IMG/VR virus record: IMGVR_UViG_3300050132_000038
Span: 124,001 to 188,000 of that record
Direction: 5' to 3' (one strand)
DNA length: 64,000 nt
In this document: positions 3,199 through 50,856 of the stretch, in pieces
How the letters are laid out: every line of letters starts with the position of its first letter
Position numbering within the stretch: the stretch's first letter is position 1
Notes under the pieces: generated by a model
What the model saw: only the letters and a program-made list of their open reading frames with translations
What the model was told of the DNA's origin: nothing
Database searches by the model: none
Position numbers and translations under genes: made by a program

Positions 3199-3368
3199 GA
3201 TTAACTAATCGACTCAGCTTCAGCTACTGGGGTAAATGGGTTGGCCTGTACTATACCAACTACGACTACTACCAAGGTGACAAACCTCCTCGTTGGAGTG
3301 GGTTCCATCTTGGTCTAGGGTTCTCTACTCTTATGTACCATTTGCCTAGACACCTATTAGAAGCCTAG
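3195..3368 (+). CDS. 57-aa aromatic-rich small protein (not in the supplied ORF track)
   Basis: MRLTNRLSFSYWG...MYHLPRHLLEA; ATGA overlap; paralogous to 3904..3975. Confidence 0.55.
   Translation: MRLTNRLSFSYWGKWVGLYYTNYDYYQGDKPPRWSGFHLGLGFSTLMYHLPRHLLEA
3334..3364 (+). repeat. 31-bp direct repeat, copy 1
   Basis: TGTACCATTTGCCTAGACACCTATTAGAAGC; 29/31 identical to 3941..3971. Confidence 0.9.
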
Positions 3369-38542: not shown

Positions 38543-39360
38543 ATGAGCTCTACAGTTGTTAGTCTCCAACCCAAGAAAGGATTTAAGCCTCAGTACTTTG
38601 GTGTAGTCTTCGACGCATACAACCCCCAGGTAGAAGCGCAGATGATGCGTGACTGCTTGGCAATGCAGAGGGTACTTCAAAATCATAAGCGCGAGCTAGT
38701 TATTGTGTGTGAGTCTGAAGCCCCTGACCGTATGCTCCGGGGTTTAAGTATTCGTAGAGTACCTACGCCTACGCTAACAAAGTCCTGGGCGATGTACAAG
38801 ACGAAAGCCGACTGGATGCCCGAACCAGAAGGTGCTGACGTGGTTGTACCCCGTGATCTGTATCAACCACTGAAGAAGAATACACTTCGAGTATTAGACG
38901 AGGCACACACTAATGGGTACTATTTACCGCCTTTGGAAACATTCCTTAGGGCCGCTTGACCGTGAGGTCATGTGATAAGGTTTTGAATTGTCTGGAAACT
39001 CCTTAGAGCCGTGTAGACCACAACGTAGCTATGAAATATGGGCAAGCGTGAGGGTTAAGAACTATACGGATTGGGCAACCAGCAGCGAAGTCCCGAATAG
39101 GGAAACGTTCAACGACTAGAGCGCAAGCTCGTACCCTCAAGTGAGGGGAAGCGGAACCCGTCTCTGTGAGACGAAGATATAGTCTGACCGTCTAGGGAAA
39201 TCCTAGAGCAGTTCATAAGAGAACGCTTGAGTACTAACGACACTCAGGGAACACAGTGCAAGGAAGATTGAGTCCAGAAACAGTTTCACTACTTAGACCA
39301 GCACCTAATGGTTTTTCTGTAGGCTACGGTGATAACTGGTTGAGCGCGCTCTATAGTTAG
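38543..39360 (+). CDS. Hypothetical protein interrupted by a group I intron (exon 1 to ~38947-38957, exon 2 ~39259-39360)
   Basis: Exon 1 reading frame stops at the intron edge; downstream frame QGRLSPETVSLLRPAPNGFSVGYGDNWLSALYS* can be joined in frame. Confidence 0.6.
38957..39258 (+). mobile_element. ORF-less group I intron, subgroup IA-like (boundaries approximate)
   Basis: P AATTGTCTGGAAA; Q AACCAGCAGC; R GTTCAACGACTAG; S AAGATATAGTC; P7 GACTA/TAGTC; P3 GGTTTT/GGAACC; P7.1, P7.2, P8 and P9 hairpins. Confidence 0.88.
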
Positions 39361-39383
39361 GGTCGAACACCCTACAATTTCAC

Positions 39384-39451
39384 AGTGAGCATAAAGCGAA
39401 AAGGTTTAGCGGCCCTGTCATGCCAATACATGACTAGCTTTATGTCTCACT
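39384..39451 (+). ncRNA. Structured leader (three-way junction), copy 1, upstream of endonuclease 1
   Basis: AGTGAG-CATAAAGC/GCTTTATG-T-CTCACT; GTCATG/CATGAC; conserved at 47315..47386. Confidence 0.65.
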
Positions 39452-39475
39452 TCTTAAACCTATTGGGGTTGCCAA

Positions 39476-40582
39476 ATGTCTTCATCTAAAGAGCATACTT
39501 ATGCTTTCCGTGTGCCATCGTCCTCACTTTTCGATAAAGCACTCACCAAATTAGTAAAACAAGTAGAGACGAAGGCTGCCTCTACTGACTCCGAGCTCGA
39601 CCCAGATCCAATCTACTATGTGTACGTACTGCTTGATCCACGAAAACCTGGAGCATTTGAGTACACACTTCCCGGTAGCAAGCTAATCGCTTTTAAGTAT
39701 CAACCCTTCTACGTGGGTAAGGGTAAAGGCGACAGGCTGAAGACTCATGTGAAGTCTACTCGTAAGCGTGTGGCTAGGGGTCGGAAGCTCACACATAAAG
39801 AAAACACGATTAAGAAGATCGAAAGTTTGGGTCTTAAAGTAATTGAGAAGCGTATAAGTTTCGACCTCCCTGAGGCAGTATCATTTGCCAAAGAGATAAT
39901 GTTAATCTCCACAATTGGTAGAGTCGATCTGGGTACAGGATTACTTACTAATTGGTCAGGCGGCGGTGAGGGCGTTATAGATTTATCCCCTGAGACGATT
40001 CGGAAACATAGTGAATCGCAGAAGGCCGTACGTGCTGCGTTAACTCCTAAGCAAAATGCAAAGCGTAATAAGCTCACCAGCGAAAGCGTAGCAGCTGAGT
40101 GGAAAGCTAGATCACCTGACGCTAAGAAAGTCCACGCACAGAAGACCATTGCCCAGATGGAAGCACTAACGGATAAAGAGCGGCGACAACTTACTGCCCC
40201 TGCCCGTAAAGCATACAAGAAAGTTCTAGATTCCCTAACTGATGAAGAGCGCAACAAGCTATTAGGTAGTGGATCTAAAGCTTGGTGGGCCTCTATGACA
40301 GACGAGGAACGAGAGTCACAGAACAAGAAGGCAGGTACTGCTCTGAGTAAGAGTCTACAGGCGAGATCCCCTGAGGCAAAAGCCAAGCACTATAACAATC
40401 AGCGTAACGCGCAGCTAGCTCGAATAGCTAATATGACTCCGGAAGAGCGGGAAGCTGAACGAGCACGAAAGCGCGCCCAACTTGACGCGCTACCTATACA
40501 GCAGTGTCCTCACTGTGGATATGAGGGTAAGGGGCCTAACATGAAGAAGTATCATTTTGATAGATGCAAGTATAAGTCTTAA
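39476..40582 (+). CDS. Free-standing GIY-YIG-family homing endonuclease
   Basis: YYVYVLLDPRKP...PFYVGKG.G.R...H; LTN; helical repeats; C-terminal CPHC...YHFDRC. Confidence 0.75.
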   Translation: MSSSKEHTYAFRVPSSSLFDKALTKLVKQVETKAASTDSELDPDPIYYVYVLLDPRKPGAFEYTLPGSKLIAFKYQPFYVGKGKGDRLKTHVKSTRKRVARGRKLTHKENTIKKIESLGLKVIEKRISFDLPEAVSFAKEIMLISTIGRVDLGTGLLTNWSGGGEGVIDLSPETIRKHSESQKAVRAALTPKQNAKRNKLTSESVAAEWKARSPDAKKVHAQKTIAQMEALTDKERRQLTAPARKAYKKVLDSLTDEERNKLLGSGSKAWWASMTDEERESQNKKAGTALSKSLQARSPEAKAKHYNNQRNAQLARIANMTPEEREAERARKRAQLDALPIQQCPHCGYEGKGPNMKKYHFDRCKYKS

Positions 40583-43678: not shown

Positions 43679-45769
43679 ATGGCTGACAAACCAAAAACCC
43701 CTAAGTTTAGAAGTGACGCAGAACGGAAGAAATGGGACGCGCTGCAGCACAACGCTGGCCACTCTATATCTAAGATTGCCGAGGGTAAGGGCCAACCTCA
43801 AGACTTCCAGAAAATTGAGAAGACTCTTGAGGGCCTAAGTAAGTTAGCCAAGCGCGTATTCTCCGATGCAGTGAAGGCAGCTGAAGCACAGGTTAACATA
43901 GTACAAAAGGCTAACCTTAAGAAGACTAAAGAAGATCAGGCAGAGTTCTCCAAAGCAGTAGGGGAAGTTCTTAAGGAGCAGATGCCTGAGATCCTTGCTA
44001 AGATCAAAGACATTATTGAGATTGAGTCTCTGGATCAAGACACCCGTTTCGAGAAGACTCTTAGCTCTCAGTTGAATTCCTTTGCTTCGTTCCTGCCTCC
44101 TAAGGATATTCCCACCACAGACGATGTGATGGCTATCCACGAGGCTTCGCTAGAGCAGCAAGGTACTACCGATGATCGTAAGTGGGACAGTCGCCAACGT
44201 AAGCTAGTTGACTCCATTACTGATAGTGTGGCAGCTGTTATCAAAGCCACCATCCTTAGTGCGGCTATGGCTAGTGTTAGTCCTGCAGCTGCAGCTAGGT
44301 ACAGCACACCGTTACTAGGAGCACCTCAGGCATCCTCAAGTAGGGCAGCTTCTCAAGATTGGGACTTAGACGATGAACCTACAGTAGGTCGTCGTGGTTC
44401 GTCTATGCTGAGTGGGGCACATACTAGGGACACAGCTAGTTCTCCTTGGGAATTGACGGACGATGAACCTAGAGCTCAGACCAAATATAATACCGGGCTA
44501 ACCACTGTGCATGACGTAGGGAATGCGCTGGTGAAGTCTGGTGCTCCTGGCGGTGGCCAGAGTACGGCACTAACCTCTATAGCGCAAAGCTTAGGCACCC
44601 TAGCCCTAGCTGGCCCGGCTACGGCAGCTACAGCAGCTACCACAGGAGCACCTGCAGCAGCCGGTGCAGCTGCTGAGGACGATGAAAAGACCGCAGATGT
44701 ATGGTGGAGATCGTTTGGTACGTGGATTGGTGATAAGTATGAGTCTGTAGCCTCTAAAGCGGATACTGCTAAGGGTTGGCTAGCCGCTTTGGGTACTGGC
44801 TTGATGAGCATACTATTAGCTCCTCAGTTATACGAAACAATAGCGAAGAAGGCCAAGGAACTATTGACCTGGGATAACATTAAGAAGAGTGCCGAAGGTG
44901 CGTGGAACTTAATGTACGACAAGGGCAGTGAGCTTATAAAATGGGTCACTGATAAACTCGGACTAGGACCGGCTATCGATAAAGCAAAAGACGTATTTAA
45001 AGATATATCGGATGCCGTAGGTTGGGTCGCCAGTAAGTTAGGGTTCAGCAGTAAGAAAGAACCTACGAAGTTTAACTCTCGGCAGGCCACCGGAGGTAAG
45101 GGAACGACTGCCGGAGGGGGTGGTGGGGGTCGACAAGCAGTACAACCACTCACACAGGCACAGCAAGCCTCAGTTAACAAGAGTAATGCTGCAACTCTTG
45201 CTAAAGGTGAGTCATCTGTTGCTAGCGGAGCAAAACTGGTAGGTAGCGCCATAGGGAAAGGGGTATCCGCAGTAGGTCGTGGTGCAGCCACAGTTGGTAA
45301 GGCCCTGGTGGGTAGTAACGTGCCTGAATCCTCAATAGGCGGAGGGGACATAGGGGCACTGGGTACAGCTCTGGCTCCTGGATTAAAGTCTGCGGGTTCC
45401 TCTGTTGCCTCGGGAGCTAGCGCCTTAGTAAACGCTAAGAGTAGCACAGGCTTCGTCTCCCGACAGGGCGGGGCACGCCCTCCAGTAGTCAGCCAACCTG
45501 TTCCTACTTTGCCCACCTCGAGTGCTCCTGCTACCAGCTTTGGTACCTCAGGTATTACTAAAACCACTAGTGTCCCAGGTACTGCCGTAAGAACTACCCC
45601 AGCTGTTACTCATCCAGTTGCCGGGGCGGGTACTACTAGTACTGTAGGCGGGGCCTCAGGTGCTCCTAAAACTAATAGCACTAGCACGGTCGGCCTTGAT
45701 TCATTCAAGATTAGCTCTGGAGTAGATGATTCATTAGCCTTAATGAATATGAGTGTTATCACAGGCTAA
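43679..45769 (+). CDS. Tape-measure-like or baseplate hub protein
   Basis: Helical N-half, W-spaced segment, G/A/S/T-rich C-terminus; position in module. Confidence 0.5.
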   Translation: MADKPKTPKFRSDAERKKWDALQHNAGHSISKIAEGKGQPQDFQKIEKTLEGLSKLAKRVFSDAVKAAEAQVNIVQKANLKKTKEDQAEFSKAVGEVLKEQMPEILAKIKDIIEIESLDQDTRFEKTLSSQLNSFASFLPPKDIPTTDDVMAIHEASLEQQGTTDDRKWDSRQRKLVDSITDSVAAVIKATILSAAMASVSPAAAARYSTPLLGAPQASSSRAASQDWDLDDEPTVGRRGSSMLSGAHTRDTASSPWELTDDEPRAQTKYNTGLTTVHDVGNALVKSGAPGGGQSTALTSIAQSLGTLALAGPATAATAATTGAPAAAGAAAEDDEKTADVWWRSFGTWIGDKYESVASKADTAKGWLAALGTGLMSILLAPQLYETIAKKAKELLTWDNIKKSAEGAWNLMYDKGSELIKWVTDKLGLGPAIDKAKDVFKDISDAVGWVASKLGFSSKKEPTKFNSRQATGGKGTTAGGGGGGRQAVQPLTQAQQASVNKSNAATLAKGESSVASGAKLVGSAIGKGVSAVGRGAATVGKALVGSNVPESSIGGGDIGALGTALAPGLKSAGSSVASGASALVNAKSSTGFVSRQGGARPPVVSQPVPTLPTSSAPATSFGTSGITKTTSVPGTAVRTTPAVTHPVAGAGTTSTVGGASGAPKTNSTSTVGLDSFKISSGVDDSLALMNMSVITG

Positions 45770-45772
45770 CCT

Positions 45773-47233
45773 ATGAACTCTCTAACAGACGCAGCAGCAC
45801 TAGTACCTACGCCTAGAGAGCGCACTAGCGATTCTACTAAGGACCTAGAAGACCAGATTGATAACGCAGATCTCTCTACACTATTAGCAGCCTTGGAAAC
45901 TCCAGCAGTGGAAGAACACTTGACTGAAGGTGTTCAGGGGTTGGTGAACAAGTATCAGAAGAAGCAAAGCCCACCCCTTGCTGCCATTACTCTAGGGGTT
46001 GTTGAAACCTTCAGGGAGATGCAGGACTTAGAGGAGAAGTTCTCAAACGTAGAGGGTGAGGGCATTCACCTACTGAAGCGTGTAGCTAAGTGGGGAATAC
46101 ATAAGATCGTTAAGTACGTGTTCAAACTAGCATTAAAGCTAACGCTCAAGTTTGTACGCTGGATAGTTAAAAAGGTAATCGTGCAGGGTCTAAAGGCTCT
46201 AGTGGAATGGGTTGTACGCCCCATTCTTACGGAAGCCTTAGGATTCATCGGAGTCAACCCTGAACTGTGGCCGTTCATCGCAATAGCAGGGGGTGTTGCT
46301 GGTATCGGTCTCGCTAGTTGGAAGATGTTTTTCGATAAGCCAGCCTCTGACAAGACGGACTCTATAGATCCCACTACTGATGAGTTCCTGTCAGGTGCTC
46401 TACGTGATGTGCAGAAGGGGGAGACCGCCGGAGAGCCTACAGGAGAAACTACTGTAGCAGCTCAGGGTCAGGGTATGGTTGCTGCACCTCCTATTGCAGC
46501 AGGGTCTGTGGCAGTACCCCCAACGGGTGACGATAAAGCTATCATGGCAATGATTATGCGCCATGAGGGAGTAAAGCTGACGCCCTACAAAGACTCATTA
46601 GGATTATGGACAGTCGGTGTAGGTCACTTAATTGGAGATGGGCATAGCTTACCCCCTGAGTGGAACCGCACGTTCACTATGGATGAGATCCAGGCCTTGT
46701 TTGCCCAGGACTACCTCAAGCATAAGAAAGCTGCTATGAACATTCCAAACTTTGCACGCCTAAGTTCCGGCGGGCAGGCAGCCCTTATTGATATGACGTA
46801 CAATATGGGTCCGACTTGGTGGCATGGCTGGCCGACCTTTACTAAGTTCATGCAAGATCTGGACATAGCAGACGCAGCTGCAAGTCTGGAAAGCAGTAAG
46901 TGGTACACACAGGTTGGCGCACGTGCTCAGGAAGTGGTGGCACTGTTGAAGTCCAGTACGATTAACAGCGGAAGTACAGTAGCAGCCTCGGCTAATAAGC
47001 TTAGTGGTGCGCCTCCGGCCACCGCACCTACTACACAGATTGCTAGTAGTACACGCTCAGCTCCTAGTTATCCAGTGAAGCAGACCACCGCAGTTACCGT
47101 GGCATCGACTAATGTGCCTAGCGCACAGAGTACCCAGCAGTCCTCCGGTGCTTCAGGTGGTATTGTTAATCCACCACCAGCAGATAAGAATTACATCCAG
47201 GGTGCTAAAGGCACTCTGATAGCAGTAAGTTAA
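45773..47233 (+). CDS. Virion-associated lysozyme (GH24 domain)
   Basis: RHEGVKLTPYKDSLGLWTVGVGHL; ALIDMTYNMG; SKWYTQVGAR. Confidence 0.85.
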   Translation: MNSLTDAAALVPTPRERTSDSTKDLEDQIDNADLSTLLAALETPAVEEHLTEGVQGLVNKYQKKQSPPLAAITLGVVETFREMQDLEEKFSNVEGEGIHLLKRVAKWGIHKIVKYVFKLALKLTLKFVRWIVKKVIVQGLKALVEWVVRPILTEALGFIGVNPELWPFIAIAGGVAGIGLASWKMFFDKPASDKTDSIDPTTDEFLSGALRDVQKGETAGEPTGETTVAAQGQGMVAAPPIAAGSVAVPPTGDDKAIMAMIMRHEGVKLTPYKDSLGLWTVGVGHLIGDGHSLPPEWNRTFTMDEIQALFAQDYLKHKKAAMNIPNFARLSSGGQAALIDMTYNMGPTWWHGWPTFTKFMQDLDIADAAASLESSKWYTQVGARAQEVVALLKSSTINSGSTVAASANKLSGAPPATAPTTQIASSTRSAPSYPVKQTTAVTVASTNVPSAQSTQQSSGASGGIVNPPPADKNYIQGAKGTLIAVS

Positions 47234-47243
47234 GGAGTACCTA

Positions 47244-47288
47244 ATGTCGAATATAAATCCGAACTACATGGTGACTATCGCCCCTTAG
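47244..47288 (+). pseudogene. Orphan 5' stub (MSNINPNYMVTIAP*) of the gene at 48476
   Basis: TAAGGAG RBS; 10 of the first 12 aa identical to the 48476 N-terminus. Confidence 0.8.
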
Positions 47289-47314
47289 ACAACTTGCTAC
47301 CCTGTCAATTTAAT

Positions 47315-47386
47315 AGTGAGCATAGAGCGAAAGGGCCGGCCAGCCTCCGTCAGATCCATATCATCTGACTAGCTTTATGTTTCACT
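47315..47386 (+). ncRNA. Structured leader (three-way junction), copy 2, upstream of endonuclease 2
   Basis: AGTGAG-CATAGAGC/GCTTTATG-T-TTCACT; GTCAGAT/ATCTGAC (compensatory relative to copy 1). Confidence 0.65.
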
Positions 47387-47411
47387 TCTTAAATCGATAT
47401 GGGGTTGTCAA

Positions 47412-48473
47412 ATGTCCACGAACTACCAGGAGCTCGCTGAGCTCTACTTCCACGAGTACGACCAAAATTCCCTTGAAGACCCGTATGAAAAGAAGCGGCG
47501 CAAAGTCTTTAAAGAATTAGCAGCCGCTATAATAACCTCGGAATTCCCAGAGCTAGAAGCTCAGATCGCAATAGCTGCCTGGAACTTAACCGCAGAGTTA
47601 GCCGTTACTGGTAACAAAGGTAAAGGACGTAGACTTAAGTTAGATAAAATCTTCTACGTGTACGTTCTTATGGATCCCCGTAAGCCAGGCCAGTGGATTA
47701 TAGATCTCCCAGGTGGGAAAATTATTGAGCTTCCTTTCCTACCTTTCTACGTAGGAAAAGGGTACGGTGGTAGAATGAAGGCACACGCCCGACACGCCAG
47801 AGCTAAGCCCACTCCTGTAGCAGGTGAGCATAAAGCTAACACTATTCGTAGTCTTCATCGCCTTGGCCTAGAACCTATAGAGAAACGAGTCAGTGGATTC
47901 TCTATAGAGGCCGTAGCACTAATGAAGGAAGTGGGGTTAGTGAAAGCTGTTGGTCGTGGTAGGAATGGACCACTTACTAATCTTAGTGACGCCGGGGAGG
48001 GCCTAAGCGGCTACAAGCCCACTGAGGAAACTAAAGCTAAAATAGCTGCTAAGCTAGATCAGATCGTAGCCAAAAGAAAAGCTACCTATGCGGGCAAGAG
48101 TCAAGAAGAGTTAGACGCTATCAACGAGAAGAATAGCCTAGCGCATCGTGGTAAGAAACAGAGTGTTGAAACACTTGAGAAGCGAGTAGCACAATTACGT
48201 GGTACCACCCGCCCGACGGAAGTAGGTACTAAAATTAGTGCTTCTAAGATGGGGCATGAGACCTCAGTAGAAACACGGGCAAAGCAGAGCGCTGCAAAGA
48301 AAGGTCGACCGGCGCTCAATAAGGGTACTACTCATACTGAGGAAACTAAAGCTAAGATGCGCGCAGCTAAAGCTGCTCAGCCTATAAAAATTTGTGAGCA
48401 CTGTGGCACAGAAAGTAAAGGTACTGCCTTTACTAGATGGCATGGTGACAACTGTAAGTTTAAGAAGGATTAG
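47412..48473 (+). CDS. Free-standing GIY-YIG homing endonuclease with NUMOD3-like repeats
   Basis: FYVYVLMDPRKP...PFYVGKG; KGTTHTEETKAKM-type repeats; C-terminal CEHC...WHGDNC. Confidence 0.8.
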   Translation: MSTNYQELAELYFHEYDQNSLEDPYEKKRRKVFKELAAAIITSEFPELEAQIAIAAWNLTAELAVTGNKGKGRRLKLDKIFYVYVLMDPRKPGQWIIDLPGGKIIELPFLPFYVGKGYGGRMKAHARHARAKPTPVAGEHKANTIRSLHRLGLEPIEKRVSGFSIEAVALMKEVGLVKAVGRGRNGPLTNLSDAGEGLSGYKPTEETKAKIAAKLDQIVAKRKATYAGKSQEELDAINEKNSLAHRGKKQSVETLEKRVAQLRGTTRPTEVGTKISASKMGHETSVETRAKQSAAKKGRPALNKGTTHTEETKAKMRAAKAAQPIKICEHCGTESKGTAFTRWHGDNCKFKKD

Positions 48474-48475
48474 TT

Positions 48476-49372
48476 ATGAGCAATATTAACCCTGCGTATC
48501 AAGTCACAATTATGCAAAGCCATGTTCCAGCAGGGCAGACACCAATTATAGTACAGGCACCCTTACCTGAGACCTTTGCCTTCGACTCCAATGCTAGTTA
48601 CGCTCAATCACTACCTCAGGGTCCTACCTCTGGTGCAGTTGCTCAGGTAGCCTCGGCCTTTGGTATTCGATTAGCAGTACCAGCAATGACAGCCCAGTTG
48701 TGGCAGGGTGCCTCAGAGACTACCTTAACCCTTGCTCTTGAATTTCATACAGAGAGTGATCCAGTAGCAGACGTACAAACACCTATTCTCAACTTGAATA
48801 GGTTGACCATGCCCTCTGTTAGTTCTAGTACAGGGATGTTGCAGTCTCCGGGGCCTTCCTTGAATGTGTCGCAGATAACTACACTGGTTAAGAATGCCGG
48901 TACGCAGTTAGTTAACACCGCAACGGCCGTAGGTAACGGGCAGGTGCAACCTACCGCAGCGTCGATGACAAACACCTCTGTTAGTGCTAACCAAGGTTCT
49001 AACACTCCGGTTACTCAGTCGAACACACAGAACCCGCAGTTGGGTAGCTCTCAGTATTGGAAGTCACAGGTAGCCAATCAGATTTCAATTCGGATTGGTA
49101 ACTATATGTTCTTTGACTCGGTTGTTATAACAAACGTCCAGCAGACGTTCATGTCAAACATAGATGCTGCAACCGGATTGCCGCATCATGCTACGGTGAA
49201 CATAACGTTCAAGCCGTTCTTCATGCTGACTCAAGAAGACCTGTCCTCCGTGTTCATTAACAATCAGTCGAAGGCGGGCCTACCAACTACTAGTAACATA
49301 GGTAGTGGCATTATGGGCCCTCCTGTCTCCTTGTCCCAAGCTGCACTACTAGCACAGACTACTATTCGATAG
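48476..49372 (+). CDS. Baseplate/tail-tube junction protein (gp48-like)
   Basis: LWQGASETTLTLALEF; IRIG...FDSVVITNV...ATVNITF. Confidence 0.55.
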   Translation: MSNINPAYQVTIMQSHVPAGQTPIIVQAPLPETFAFDSNASYAQSLPQGPTSGAVAQVASAFGIRLAVPAMTAQLWQGASETTLTLALEFHTESDPVADVQTPILNLNRLTMPSVSSSTGMLQSPGPSLNVSQITTLVKNAGTQLVNTATAVGNGQVQPTAASMTNTSVSANQGSNTPVTQSNTQNPQLGSSQYWKSQVANQISIRIGNYMFFDSVVITNVQQTFMSNIDAATGLPHHATVNITFKPFFMLTQEDLSSVFINNQSKAGLPTTSNIGSGIMGPPVSLSQAALLAQTTIR

Positions 49373-49381
49373 GGGTACGAG

Positions 49382-49726
49382 ATGGCTATTGATACCGATT
49401 ACGACTGGACTAACTACACAGTAGTAGATAACACAGGTACCGACTGGGATGTGTTCAGTTCAGCTTACAAGAATTTGAGGTTCAACGTACCAACCAACCA
49501 GCAGGTACAGCTCACTGCCTCGACAGCAGCTAACCTTCCAGGGCTTGCTTATCTGTACTACGGGGATACGTCCTTGTGGCGTGCCCTCTTGGCGTACAAC
49601 GGCTGGTCTGATCCGCTCTCGGAGGTTGCGCCGGGAGTAGTAATGAACATTCCTACAAAGGCAGCACTCCTGCAATACCTGTCTTCACAGAAGGCTACTA
49701 ACGTCCCTGTGACAATTACGATCTAA
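49382..49726 (+). CDS. LysM-like baseplate wedge protein (gp53/tail X)
   Basis: LAYLYYGDTSLWRALLAYNG.SDP...PG..MNIP. Confidence 0.75.
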   Translation: MAIDTDYDWTNYTVVDNTGTDWDVFSSAYKNLRFNVPTNQQVQLTASTAANLPGLAYLYYGDTSLWRALLAYNGWSDPLSEVAPGVVMNIPTKAALLQYLSSQKATNVPVTITI

Positions 49727-49734
49727 GGTATAGT

Positions 49735-50856
49735 ATGTCCTATATTATTAAGGATCGCATAGAGATCAGCATTAGCATCAACGGTACTGACTACCCTATA
49801 AGCCCTGGCACAAACACGTTAAACTTTTTGCAGATGGGGTGTTCAGCGCGTCAGAAGCTTCCCACCTGTCACTTCATGGTGACAGACAATACGAAAGCCT
49901 TGGACAAGGTGTTCCTGCAGGATGGTATACCCCTCACAATAACTACTAAGGCGTATAAGTTCCCGACCCACACTTATACCTTCCGCCTGTTCCATAAGAG
50001 GAAGACGTTCGATGGTTCTTCCTTTAGGTATGAGATAGACGGCTATTGGGACTCCCCTATCTACTGGGCAGGTACTTCCGAAGCAGGGATGCAGGGAACC
50101 TCCAGTACGGTGTTGCAGACCATTGCAACACTGAGCGGCCTACAGTACAGGGGGATTACCACTAATGATCCACAGCTATGGATGCAGCGTAATCGTAGCT
50201 ATGGTGACTTCGTTAAAACCGTTTATCAACACGGGTACATCTCTGATAGCTCATACACCGTAGCCGGAGTGGATTTAACCGGAACCCTAATCTATGTAGA
50301 TGCTAACAATCTGCCTAAGCCTACGACTACATTAGTAGCGTATCAGAACATCGAGGGCATGTACACCGTAGCGGATTACAAGGCAACTACTAAGTCTGGA
50401 TTGAACAATAACCTAACGGGTTACAATAACGCTAGGTACACACAGAGTCAGACAGGGGTGCTCTCGACGGCTAACGACCAGCTAGCATTCACGCCGGACA
50501 CTACTTCACCGGCGTTCAACACCACAGTGAAGACGCAGGCTGCTCGTGGTTATCAGAGCTACGGCCCGATCGATGTAGGTAACGTTCATTCAAAGTACGA
50601 ACGTGCTGCCTACCAGAACATGCGGTATGCTAACCTACTTTCAATGGACGTGGACTTCCTGGTGTACACTCCGACCCCGCTAACGTTGTTCGACAAGTTT
50701 ACGTTCAGCTTGGAGACGGAGAATCACAAGCAAGATCCTGCATACTCCGGCGTATACACGGTATCAGGGTATGCTATGTTTGTACAGGGCACCACATATG
50801 CGCAGAAGATCAGCGCGTGCAGATCTGGCGTGGACGTCCCCTATACCAACGGATAA
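49735..50856 (+). CDS. Baseplate hub protein (gp27/late control D-like)
   Basis: Size and position between LysM and spike genes. Confidence 0.55.
   Translation: MSYIIKDRIEISISINGTDYPISPGTNTLNFLQMGCSARQKLPTCHFMVTDNTKALDKVFLQDGIPLTITTKAYKFPTHTYTFRLFHKRKTFDGSSFRYEIDGYWDSPIYWAGTSEAGMQGTSSTVLQTIATLSGLQYRGITTNDPQLWMQRNRSYGDFVKTVYQHGYISDSSYTVAGVDLTGTLIYVDANNLPKPTTTLVAYQNIEGMYTVADYKATTKSGLNNNLTGYNNARYTQSQTGVLSTANDQLAFTPDTTSPAFNTTVKTQAARGYQSYGPIDVGNVHSKYERAAYQNMRYANLLSMDVDFLVYTPTPLTLFDKFTFSLETENHKQDPAYSGVYTVSGYAMFVQGTTYAQKISACRSGVDVPYTNG

What the first reader, a model, noticed from the sequence alone, without database searches (positions are those of the whole stretch)
47244..48511. Endonuclease cassette splits a baseplate gene and supplies a synonymously recoded copy of its 5' end
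Seen: a strong RBS plus MSNINPNYMVTIAP* (47244..47288) precedes the leader and endonuclease, and the full gene restarts at 48476 as MSNINPAYQVTIMQ. Ten of the first 12 residues are identical, yet 8 of the 9 shared non-Met codons differ (tcg/agc, ata/att, aat/aac, ccg/cct, tac/tat, gtg/gtc, act/aca, atc/att). Inference: an intron-less element entered an essential virion gene and avoids inactivating it by carrying a new RBS and a recoded N-terminus, which would also remove its own target site. This would be a non-splicing alternative to introns and inteins.
Basis: partly seen in the sequence, partly recalled or inferred. Interest (0 to 1): 0.86.

Follow-up and report, generated by a model that had tools for sequence, protein, structure and literature searches.

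The report
Homing endonuclease carrying replacement gene start
A selfish endonuclease gene sits 12 codons inside a jumbo phage's baseplate gene and keeps that gene working by bringing a new ribosome-binding site and a differently spelled copy of the displaced first 12 codons, a phage, 5'-end counterpart of a trick so far described for mobile endonuclease genes in fungal mitochondria.

Summary
A 14-codon stub (47244..47288) repeats 10 of the first 12 residues of the 298-aa gene at 48476, and 8 of the 9 shared non-Met codons differ. No other ORF in the window has such an upstream echo.

The two closest relatives lack the 1232-nt insert. About 45 more distant relatives also have the lysozyme-domain gene abutting this gene.

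The insert (47280..48511) has four parts: an in-frame stop, a conserved structured leader, an apparently intact GIY-YIG/NUMOD3 homing endonuclease gene, and a Shine-Dalgarno sequence plus ATG with 11 further codons.

The "recoding" is most simply a foreign allele brought in with the endonuclease. In a parallel case found here (L110), the stub matches endonuclease-free relatives, while the restarted gene carries a roughly 270-nt divergent tract.

A survey of 81 other loci of this endonuclease family gave two more 5' stub cases and one 3' case. The closest known analogue is the fungal mitochondrial mobile ORF that replaces a gene's C-terminus.

Verdict: new variant of a known kind, with moderate to high interest. 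Nuclease activity, target-site immunity and expression are all untested.

The parts
45773..47233 (+). Upstream gene: a 486-aa protein with a lysozyme domain (tail or internal virion lysozyme). In relatives its stop lies 8-11 nt before the baseplate gene.
   Evidence: Pfam Phage_lysozyme, E = 2.3e-12. PHROGs matches: endolysin and tail lysozyme. Synteny in BCSR5, phiRSL1, BcepSaruman and Motura.
47232..47279 (+). Resident remnant: the native SD (aaggag), the ATG and codons 1-12 of the baseplate gene (MSNINPNYMVTI).
   Evidence: Together with the preceding ~40 nt, it is identical to the empty-site relative L018 through codon 5 plus 2 nt. Identity to L018 is 28/36 nt and to L017 19/24 nt, against 24/36 and 11/24 for the downstream copy.
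47280..47304 (+). Left end of the insert. Two codons and an in-frame TAG (47286-47288) close the stub ORF. The origin of this stretch is unknown.
   Evidence: there is no other copy in the window. A TAG at the same distance precedes the leader of the second endonuclease gene, where it is the stop of the upstream gene.
47305..47411 (+). Conserved structured leader of the endonuclease gene. It is a three-way junction preceded by a CAATTT(T)A motif.
   Evidence: 90% identical over 51 nt to the leader at 39431-39480. All four copies fold the same way (z = -2.1 to -4.6). 9 of 21 pairs show compensatory changes. Covariance model R1 finds 5 copies. No Rfam family matches.
47412..48473 (+). Free-standing GIY-YIG homing endonuclease gene (353 aa) with NUMOD3 repeats and a C-terminal Cys/His zinc-finger-like motif.
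   Evidence: Pfam LEM-3_GIY-YIG E = 1.1e-07 and NUMOD3 E = 7.2e-10. All family-invariant residues are present: Y82, Y84, Y113, G115, R121, H125, E173, N190. Absent from this site in about 45 relatives.
48465..48511 (+). Replacement translation start: an SD (aagga, 48465-48469) inside the last codons of the endonuclease gene, the ATG at 48476, and codons 2-12 (SNINPAYQVTI) in a divergent spelling.
   Evidence: 20/36 nt identical to the stub, with Ser switched from TCG to AGC. No sampled relative has this spelling or the A7/Q9 residues at this place.
48512..49372 (+). Body of the baseplate gene from codon 13 on. It is a tube-initiator-like baseplate protein, labelled 'PmgG-like' in databases.
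   Evidence: The AlphaFold model (pLDDT 67.5) matches phage P1 baseplate chains 9vzk_2 and 9ay5_G, the A-1(L) baseplate initiators, and Afp/PVC/T4 baseplate chains. PHROG 1114, E = 5e-30. Conserved in synteny in all relatives.

Best explanation
**What it is.** A free-standing GIY-YIG homing endonuclease cassette of 1232 nt (47280..48511) lies between codons 12 and 13 of a conserved baseplate, tube-initiator-like gene of a phiRSL1-like jumbo phage.

**Shown.**
- The resident RBS and first 12 codons remain upstream as a 14-codon stub, closed by a stop that the insert supplies.
- The insert ends with its own SD, an ATG and 11 codons that rebuild a complete ORF.
- The baseplate gene is therefore simply restarted 2 nt after the endonuclease stop codon.

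**Inferred origin.**
- The replacement 5' end is the orthologous 5' end of a diverged donor phage. In that donor the endonuclease gene sat immediately upstream of this gene, which is the usual position for this family.
- The endonuclease cut an endonuclease-free genome near codons 12/13 during a mixed infection.
- The right end of the break was repaired by homologous recombination with the donor.
- The left end was joined without resection, by illegitimate or 'one-sided' double-strand-break repair. This left the recipient's own 5' end as the stub.

**Inferred consequence.**
- In the new arrangement the old target is divided. The half that is rebuilt next to codon 13 is spelled differently at 16 of 36 positions.
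- The cassette-bearing genome should therefore be immune to its own nuclease.
- The two repeats are also too dissimilar to recombine and delete the insert.
For: **Empty sites.**
- L017 and L018 carry the lysozyme-gene end, the RBS and a stub-like 5' end running directly into codon 13.
- Four isolated phages have the two genes 8-10 nt apart.
- About 45 metagenomic loci have the two genes adjacent with no endonuclease gene between them.

**Which copy is native.** The stub is closer to relatives than the restarted copy is: 28/36 against 24/36 nt versus L018, and 19/24 against 11/24 nt versus L017.

**Coding-type divergence.** Differences between the two copies are almost all at third positions, and 10 of 12 residues are kept. 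That is the signature of two sequences that each evolved as coding DNA.

**The endonuclease looks functional.** All conserved residues are present.

**Usual position of the family.** Relatives sit intergenically, abutting the next baseplate gene, in L024, L026, L027, L031 and L044.

**Parallel case L110, where close relatives exist.**
- The 45-codon stub is 45/45 aa and 119-120/135 nt identical to endonuclease-free relatives. The restarted copy is 88-91/135 nt identical.
- The first roughly 270 nt of the restarted gene are 63-78% identical to relatives whose remaining sequence is 89-99% identical. This is a co-conversion tract.

**Recurrence.** Among the other 81 endonuclease loci screened, L110 and L085 have 5' stubs and L067 has a 3' duplicate.

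**Precedent for the repair step.** One-sided, microhomology-joined repair during homing in T4 is summarised in PMC2988022.
Against: - No donor lineage was found. The nearest endonuclease homologue is 39-45% identical, and no sampled relative has the AYQ 5' end.
- In the window itself no foreign tract can be seen beyond codon 12. The window, L018 and L017 are about equally distant along the gene.
- The left flank is about 97% identical to L018 over the 72 nt available. Ordinary two-sided homologous repair should therefore have been possible if the donor was similar there.
- Residue N3 of the replacement copy is typical of the closest clade, not of distant relatives.
- Nuclease activity, the cleavage position and expression of either start are all untested.
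Confidence: 0.65

Rival explanations
1. **Self-contained mobile unit.** The cassette (leader, endonuclease gene, SD and 12 divergent codons) homes repeatedly as one piece into codons 12/13 of tube-initiator genes. The stub with its upstream gene serves as left homology and the gene body as right homology, so every new host's own 5' end becomes the stub. The divergent spelling is maintained by selection because an identical copy would rebuild the target. This is the 5' mirror of a mitochondrial mobile ORF. It differs from the best explanation in how the element moves, not in its anatomy.
For: - The stub is undecayed: its RBS, ATG and all 12 codons fit the family consensus. That fits a stub that is renewed at each homing event.
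- In all three 5' cases the insert supplies a stop within 1-3 codons of the junction.
- In the L110 family, two endonuclease-bearing genomes share stub, endonuclease gene and target gene at 94-100% identity, while their upstream flanks are only 63-76% identical. The stub therefore travels with the block.
- Mitochondrial mobile ORFs behave this way.
Against: - Only one lineage carries this cassette; all six contigs have the same arrangement.
- No second genomic background with the same endonuclease was found.
- In L110 the foreign tract (about 270 nt) is longer than the duplicated part (135 nt). That fits a one-off capture from an intergenic donor better than a fixed unit.
Confidence: 0.3
2. 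**Duplication in place, then true recoding.** The resident segment was duplicated on both sides of the incoming endonuclease gene. The functional copy then accumulated synonymous changes under selection against self-cleavage and against repeat recombination.
For: - Third-position identity between the copies is 2/12. That is below the 0.36-0.48 seen among the window, L018 and L017 in the same region, and it is at or below random expectation.
- 8 of 9 codons differing is rare against the local background (p about 0.01-0.02).
- The aa sequence, including N3, stays close to the nearest clade.
Against: - 16 changes in 36 nt is twice the stub-to-L018 distance. The duplication would then predate the split from relatives that show clean empty sites.
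- The Ser TCG to AGC switch, N7A and M9Q all require multi-step or non-synonymous paths.
- In L110 the divergent tract runs well past the duplicated part, which cannot arise from recoding of a duplicate.
Confidence: 0.12
3. **Removal at the RNA or protein level.** The insert is taken out by a degenerate group I intron, an intein or translational bypassing, and the stub supplies the real N-terminus.
For: The same genome does contain a genuine group I intron next to a paralogous endonuclease gene.
Against: - No intron model matches 46500-49500, even at E <= 1.
- The 123 nt outside the endonuclease ORF cannot hold a ribozyme core.
- The junctions lack the exon-terminal U and intron-terminal G in any in-frame register.
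- The stub ends in a stop codon, which excludes an intein.
- The downstream gene has its own SD and ATG and a complete N-terminus.
Confidence: 0.02

Closest known systems
Mobile endonuclease ORFs (mORFs) of fungal mitochondria that create 'gene hybrids': Allomyces macrogynus atp6, and Glomus sp. atp6, atp9, cox2 and nad3 (PMC3630166 and its reference 48, Paquin et al. 1994)
   Same: - An intron-less LAGLIDADG or GIY-YIG endonuclease ORF sits inside a protein-coding gene.
- It brings a replacement copy of the displaced terminal segment and leaves the native segment as a remnant.
- The native remnant is close to relatives in DNA (91-98%). The inserted copy is divergent in DNA (64-81%) but nearly identical in protein.
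- This pattern is read as a foreign allele acquired with the endonuclease.
   Different: - In mitochondria the C-terminus is replaced. The endonuclease ORF is often fused in frame with the host gene, and the remnant lies downstream.
- Here the N-terminus is replaced, which requires a new SD and start codon.
- The three ORFs (stub, endonuclease gene, restarted gene) are separate, closely spaced cistrons.
- The host is a phage, so the setting is mixed infection rather than mitochondrial fusion.
Free-standing Seg/Mob homing endonucleases of T4-like phages and 'intronless homing' with co-conversion of flanking markers (review PMC2988022)
   Same: - A GIY-YIG endonuclease gene with NUMOD-type DNA-binding repeats, outside any intron.
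- It is present or absent among relatives and lies beside conserved essential genes.
- The flanking DNA is a divergent tract, clearly so in L110.
   Different: - Seg and Mob genes lie between genes, so no part of the neighbouring gene is duplicated. The 2010 review does not mention duplication at all.
- Here the insertion point is 36 nt inside the ORF.
Endonuclease insertions that split phage genes: mobE in Aeh1 nrdA, mobA between T4 genes 39 and 60, and a seg gene in gene 43 of phage 25 (PMC2988022)
   Same: A free-standing endonuclease gene lies inside an essential coding region with no splicing element, and the gene still works.
   Different: In those cases the gene is cut into two polypeptides that reassemble. 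Here nothing is split: the short displaced end is replaced and the protein is made whole.
Illegitimate ('one-sided') double-strand-break repair in T4 intron homing (Parker, Belisle and Belfort 1999, as summarised in PMC2988022)
   Same: It offers a tested route by which a homing element enters using homology on one side only and a microhomology junction on the other. This is the step proposed for the left junction.
   Different: It was shown in engineered crosses. The natural outcome proposed here, a retained stub with a functional restart, was not described there.
Collaborative homing: an ORF-less group I intron next to a free-standing endonuclease gene (cyanophage psbA, T3/T7-like phages, ICP1; PMC10448857)
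   Same: The paralogous endonuclease gene in this same window (39476..40582) has exactly this layout. In both loci the nuclease's presumed target in its own genome is disrupted.
   Different: At 47 kb the disruption comes from a divergent replacement 5' end, not from an intron.

Membership tests
Free-standing GIY-YIG homing endonuclease (Seg-like) | GIY-YIG catalytic domain with the conserved Tyr, Tyr, Arg, Glu and Asn residues | tested here: met
   Pfam LEM-3_GIY-YIG, E = 1.1e-07, above the cutoff. Y82, Y84, Y113, G115, R121, H125, E173 and N190 are invariant or nearly so in 31 homologues and are all present.
Free-standing GIY-YIG homing endonuclease (Seg-like) | Separate DNA-binding module (NUMOD repeats, zinc finger) | tested here: met
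   NUMOD3, E = 7.2e-10. Repeated TEETKAK units (repeat D2). A C-terminal CxxC...H...C motif is conserved in the family.
Free-standing GIY-YIG homing endonuclease (Seg-like) | Present or absent among otherwise syntenic relatives, and not inside an intron or intein | tested here: met
   Absent at this site in L017, L018, four isolated phages and about 40 further loci. No intron model matches.
Free-standing GIY-YIG homing endonuclease (Seg-like) | Site-specific cleavage of the endonuclease-free allele and preferential inheritance in crosses | not testable with these tools
   Needs enzyme assays and mixed infections.
Mitochondrial-type mORF gene hybrid | Endonuclease ORF inside a coding region, flanked by two copies of the displaced terminal segment | tested here: met
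   Stub at 47244-47279 and restart at 48476-48511 flank the endonuclease gene.
Mitochondrial-type mORF gene hybrid | The native remnant is closer to relatives than the inserted copy, and the inserted copy is divergent in DNA but conserved in protein | tested here: met
   28/36 against 24/36 nt (L018) and 19/24 against 11/24 nt (L017), with 10/12 aa kept. The effect is strong in the parallel case L110. The window comparison rests on only 36 nt.
Mitochondrial-type mORF gene hybrid | The replaced segment is the C-terminus, and the insert is read in phase with the host gene | tested here: not met
   Here the N-terminus is replaced, and the stub, endonuclease gene and restarted gene are separate cistrons. 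One phage case of the C-terminal, in-phase type was found (L067).
Group I intron | Ribozyme core (P3-P9) and splice sites (exon-terminal U, intron-terminal G) that restore the frame | tested here: not met
   No match in 46500-49500 at E <= 1, whereas the real intron at 38933-39258 scores 65 bits. No in-frame U/G junction exists.
Intein | Continuous in-frame insertion without stop codons | tested here: not met
   The stub ORF ends at the TAG at 47286-47288, and the endonuclease gene has its own start and stop.

The most novel reading that the evidence does not exclude
Phages harbour a recurrent class of 'terminal-replacement' homing cassettes. These are endonuclease genes that live inside essential genes without any splicing. 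They carry a translation restart and a differently spelled copy of the displaced gene end. They home as a unit so that each new host's own gene end becomes the stub, and they depend on the divergent spelling for immunity to their own nuclease. Under this reading, the same endonuclease family in one genome would use two interchangeable self-protection devices: an intron at 39 kb and a replacement 5' end at 47 kb.
Probability: 0.35. Interest if true: 0.72.

Novelty: new variant of a known kind. Interest (0 to 1): 0.58.

Why it matters
- It shows how a homing endonuclease gene can colonise the inside of an essential phage structural gene at no cost and without an intron or intein. This extends to phages, and to 5' ends, a mechanism so far documented for the 3' ends of mitochondrial genes.
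- It gives a testable rule for target-site immunity. The rebuilt half-site has to be spelled differently.
- It offers a natural experiment in one genome: an intron-protected target and a replacement-protected target for paralogous nucleases.
- Short 'orphan' ORFs upstream of endonuclease genes, which annotators ignore or call as hypothetical proteins, can be remnants that mark the exact insertion and probably the cleavage point.
- The divergent 5' tracts mark horizontal exchange in virion genes.

Tried and rejected
**Searches that found nothing.**
- DNA searches of the region against 50,697 phage records, in near and distant modes, gave no match. Only protein-level relatives exist.
- No donor was found. 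No sampled protein or locus has the AYQ 5' end, and the nearest endonuclease homologue is 39-45% identical.
- The linker 47280-47301 has no other copy in the window.
- Simple promoter and terminator scans of 47100-48600 gave nothing above shuffled expectation.
- Literature searches found no phage description of a duplicated or replaced 5' end next to a homing endonuclease gene.

**Tests that were inconclusive.**
- I looked for a foreign tract downstream of codon 12 using identity profiles against L018 and L017. The three sequences are about equally distant and mosaic, so no boundary can be placed.
- A possible upstream extension of the duplication remains unresolved. The repeat 47210-47236 / 48439-48465 is 70% identical and in register within 3 nt. 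However, its second copy encodes the family-conserved C-terminus of the endonuclease, and other chance repeats of similar quality occur in the region.

**Readings rejected.**
- Intron, intein and bypass readings are rejected (and the sequence itself).

**Tool issue.**
It succeeded later.
Full report
**1. What is in the sequence**

The window is part of IMGVR_UViG_3300050132_000038, a 218,861-bp metagenomic jumbo phage. It is related at the protein level only to phiRSL1, BcepSaruman/Sauron, BCSR5 and Motura.

The gene order around the finding is:
- a 696-aa ORF at 43679..45769 that matched no family;
- a 486-aa protein with a lysozyme domain (45773..47233);
- the stub (47244..47288);
- a 123-nt leader region;
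- a 353-aa GIY-YIG/NUMOD3 endonuclease gene (47412..48473);
- the 298-aa gene (48476..49372);
- a 114-aa ORF at 49382..49726 (PHROG labels: tail sheath, baseplate wedge subunit);
- a 373-aa ORF at 49735..50856 with no annotated function, in the position before the spike-like gene;
- a gpV-like spike gene, whose Pfam match is below the curated cutoff;
- a gpW/gp25-like wedge gene.

A model of the 298-aa protein (pLDDT 67.5) matches baseplate chains of phage P1, cyanophage A-1(L) 'baseplate initiators', Afp/PVC particles and T4. The database label is 'PmgG-like head morphogenesis', but calling it a baseplate gene is justified.

**2. The observation**

- The stub reads MSNINPNYMVTIAP* behind an aaggag SD. 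The full gene starts MSNINPAYQVTIMQ.
- 10 of 12 residues are shared, 8 of the 9 shared non-Met codons differ, and 20 of 36 nt are identical.
- A scan of all 70 + strand ORFs for an upstream echo of their first 12 residues gives 3-7 matches for every other ORF and 10 for this one.
- All six public contigs that hold this protein have the same arrangement. It is therefore neither chance nor a mis-assembly.

**3. The empty site**

- In four isolated relatives, the lysozyme-domain gene ends 8-10 nt before the homologue of the 298-aa gene.
- In about 45 metagenomic loci the two genes are adjacent with no endonuclease gene between them.
- The two closest relatives decide the matter.
  - L018 (88% aa) matches the window in the last ~55 nt of the lysozyme gene apart from 2 differences, and matches exactly through the RBS and the first 17 nt of the stub. 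It then continues ...ACA ATT ATG CAG TCG, that is codon 12 straight into codon 13.
  - L017 (80% aa) has AAC TAC ATG GTA ACG ATT ATG CAA AGT. It shares the stub's NYMVTI and its spelling.
- Stub against downstream copy: 28/36 against 24/36 nt versus L018, and 19/24 against 11/24 nt versus L017.
The stub is the resident 5' end, and a 1232-nt insert (47280..48511) lies between codons 12 and 13.

**4. The insert**

- It opens with two codons and a TAG that close the stub frame.
- Next comes a leader that is shared with a second, 34%-identical endonuclease gene in the window (39476..40582) and with relatives in L027, L024 and L013.
  - All copies fold into the same three-way junction.
  - 9 of 21 pairs show compensatory changes.
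  - No Rfam family matches.
- The endonuclease keeps every residue that is invariant in 31 homologues.
- Its last codons contain an aagga SD. Its TAG is followed after 2 nt by the restart ATG.
- Relatives of this endonuclease sit between other baseplate genes, abutting the next gene, in L024, L026, L027, L031 and L044. An intergenic position directly upstream of a conserved gene is therefore the norm for this family.

**5. Is it recoding?**

- The differences between the copies are nearly all at third positions and the protein is kept. That pattern is expected when two orthologues diverge under purifying selection.
- The background between the window and its closest relatives is already 46-50% of shared codons different. 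Against it, 8 of 9 has p of about 0.01-0.02, and it would be unremarkable for a somewhat more distant donor.
- The Ser TCG/AGC switch and the N7A and M9Q replacements also point to a separate lineage.
- I could not see a foreign tract beyond codon 12 in the window, because no relative is close enough.

**6. A parallel case that can be resolved**

I screened 84 places holding this endonuclease family for peptide echoes across the gene. Three of them are the window's own locus, leaving 81 others. The screen gave three further outliers.

*L110.*
- A 46-aa stub of a sulfotransferase-family gene precedes the endonuclease gene.
- The stub's stop overlaps the endonuclease ATG, and the endonuclease stop overlaps the restart ATG.
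- Eighty relatives of this gene were fetched. Only one lineage carries the endonuclease gene at this site.
- The stub is 45/45 aa and 119-120/135 nt identical to endonuclease-free relatives. The restarted copy is 88-91/135 nt identical.
- The first roughly 270 nt of the restarted gene are 63-78% identical to relatives whose remaining sequence is 89-99% identical. This is a co-conversion tract, so the replacement 5' end is foreign DNA that came with the endonuclease gene.
- Two endonuclease-bearing genomes of this family share the stub and everything downstream at 94-100% identity, but their DNA upstream of the stub is only 63-76% identical.

*L085.* It shows the same layout in a portal gene, with a 48-aa stub.

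*L067.* It is the 3' version. The last 19 residues of the upstream gene recur as the last 19 residues of the endonuclease ORF.

**7. Mechanism proposed**

*Shown:* the insertion point, the retained native start, the supplied stop, the supplied SD and ATG with 11 codons, and the intact gene.

*Inferred:* the endonuclease cut an endonuclease-free genome near codons 12/13. The right end was repaired on a diverged donor. The left end was joined illegitimately, so the recipient's 5' end stayed behind. One-sided repair with microhomology junctions is documented for T4 homing (PMC2988022).

The divergent spelling matters for two reasons:
- An identical copy placed before codon 13 would rebuild the target.
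- Similar repeats would recombine and delete the insert.

Whether the cassette now homes as a unit, with the stub acting as left homology, remains open.

**8. Comparison with what is known**

- The nearest analogue is the mitochondrial mobile ORF that replaces the C-terminus of atp6, atp9, cox2 or nad3 and leaves the native C-terminus behind. There the native remnant is 91-98% identical in DNA to relatives and the inserted copy 64-81%, with nearly identical protein (PMC3630166).
- The phage literature describes intergenic Seg/Mob genes, co-conversion, and endonuclease insertions that split genes into two polypeptides.
- My searches found no phage case of a replaced and duplicated gene end.
- The finding is therefore a new variant of a known kind: a phage host, a 5' end, a restart by SD and ATG, and separate cistrons.

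**9. Context in the same window**

- The paralogous endonuclease gene at 39.5 kb lies 116 nt downstream of a gene that is interrupted by an ORF-less group I intron (38933..39258).
- Exon 1 ends in U and the intron ends in G.
- The spliced product reads GYYLPP|QGRLSPETV, matching the contiguous phiRSL1 ORF209.
- One genome thus shows two layouts for the same endonuclease family: an intron beside one copy and a replacement 5' end beside the other.

**10. Limits**

- Everything about activity, cleavage position, immunity, promoter use and translation of the stub or the restart is inference.
- The window's own comparison rests on 36 nt and two relatives.
- The donor is unknown.

Noticed in passing
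window 38933..39258 (intron); exons 38543..38932 and 39259..39360; endonuclease gene 39476..40582: An ORF-less group I intron (Rfam, 65 bits) interrupts the homologue of phiRSL1 ORF209 / BcepSaruman gp250. Splicing would join ...GYYLPP to QGRLSPETV..., as in the uninterrupted relatives. A free-standing GIY-YIG endonuclease gene, 34% identical to the one in the finding, starts 116 nt after the exon-2 stop. This is the 'collaborative homing' layout.
   Followed up: yes
window 47305..47414 and 39374..39478; L027 2137..2241; L024 10472..10579; L013 10624..10733: A conserved structured leader of about 105 nt (three-way junction, 9 of 21 pairs with compensatory changes) lies directly upstream of the ATG of this endonuclease subfamily. 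It is preceded by a CAATTT(T)A motif and matches no Rfam family. It may control translation or carry a phage promoter. In the two window copies, a CCCU stretch upstream of the motif can pair with the GGGG before the ATG.
   Followed up: partly
L110 2527..5212 (IMGVR_UViG_3300044516_000147): A second 5' replacement case. A 46-aa stub of a sulfotransferase-family gene is followed by the endonuclease gene and the restarted gene, linked by two ATGA stop/start overlaps. There is a clear divergent tract of about 270 nt relative to 75 endonuclease-free relatives.
   Followed up: yes
L085 3282..6555 (IMGVR_UViG_3300002097_000062): A third 5' case. A 48-aa stub of a portal gene is followed by the endonuclease gene 3 nt after the stub stop. 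The portal gene restarts overlapping the end of the endonuclease gene. The only endonuclease-free relative found (83% identical) shares features with both copies.
   Followed up: partly
L067 3049..4304 (IMGVR_UViG_3300035698_020380): A 3' (mitochondrial mORF-like) version in a phage. The last 19 residues of a 126-aa gene are repeated, with only 5 synonymous differences, as the last 19 residues of the adjacent GIY-YIG ORF.
   Followed up: partly
window 47210..47236 and 48439..48465: A 27-nt direct repeat, 70% identical, lies in register (within 3 nt) with the stub/restart duplication. Its second copy encodes the conserved C-terminal Cys/His motif of the endonuclease. It could be chance, or a microhomology used in recombination.
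   Followed up: partly
L027 2125..2140 and 3330..3360: In this relative, the same leader-plus-endonuclease cassette follows a lone ATG directly after the upstream gene's stop. The downstream spike-like gene begins with TTG GGA CTC AAT where relatives have ATG GGA .. AAT. This could be an insertion right after the start codon, giving a one-codon stub.
   Followed up: no
window 49232..49291 against L017: This 60-nt stretch is 100% identical to a relative that is otherwise about 60-90% identical. It is a local recombination mosaic inside the baseplate gene.
   Followed up: no
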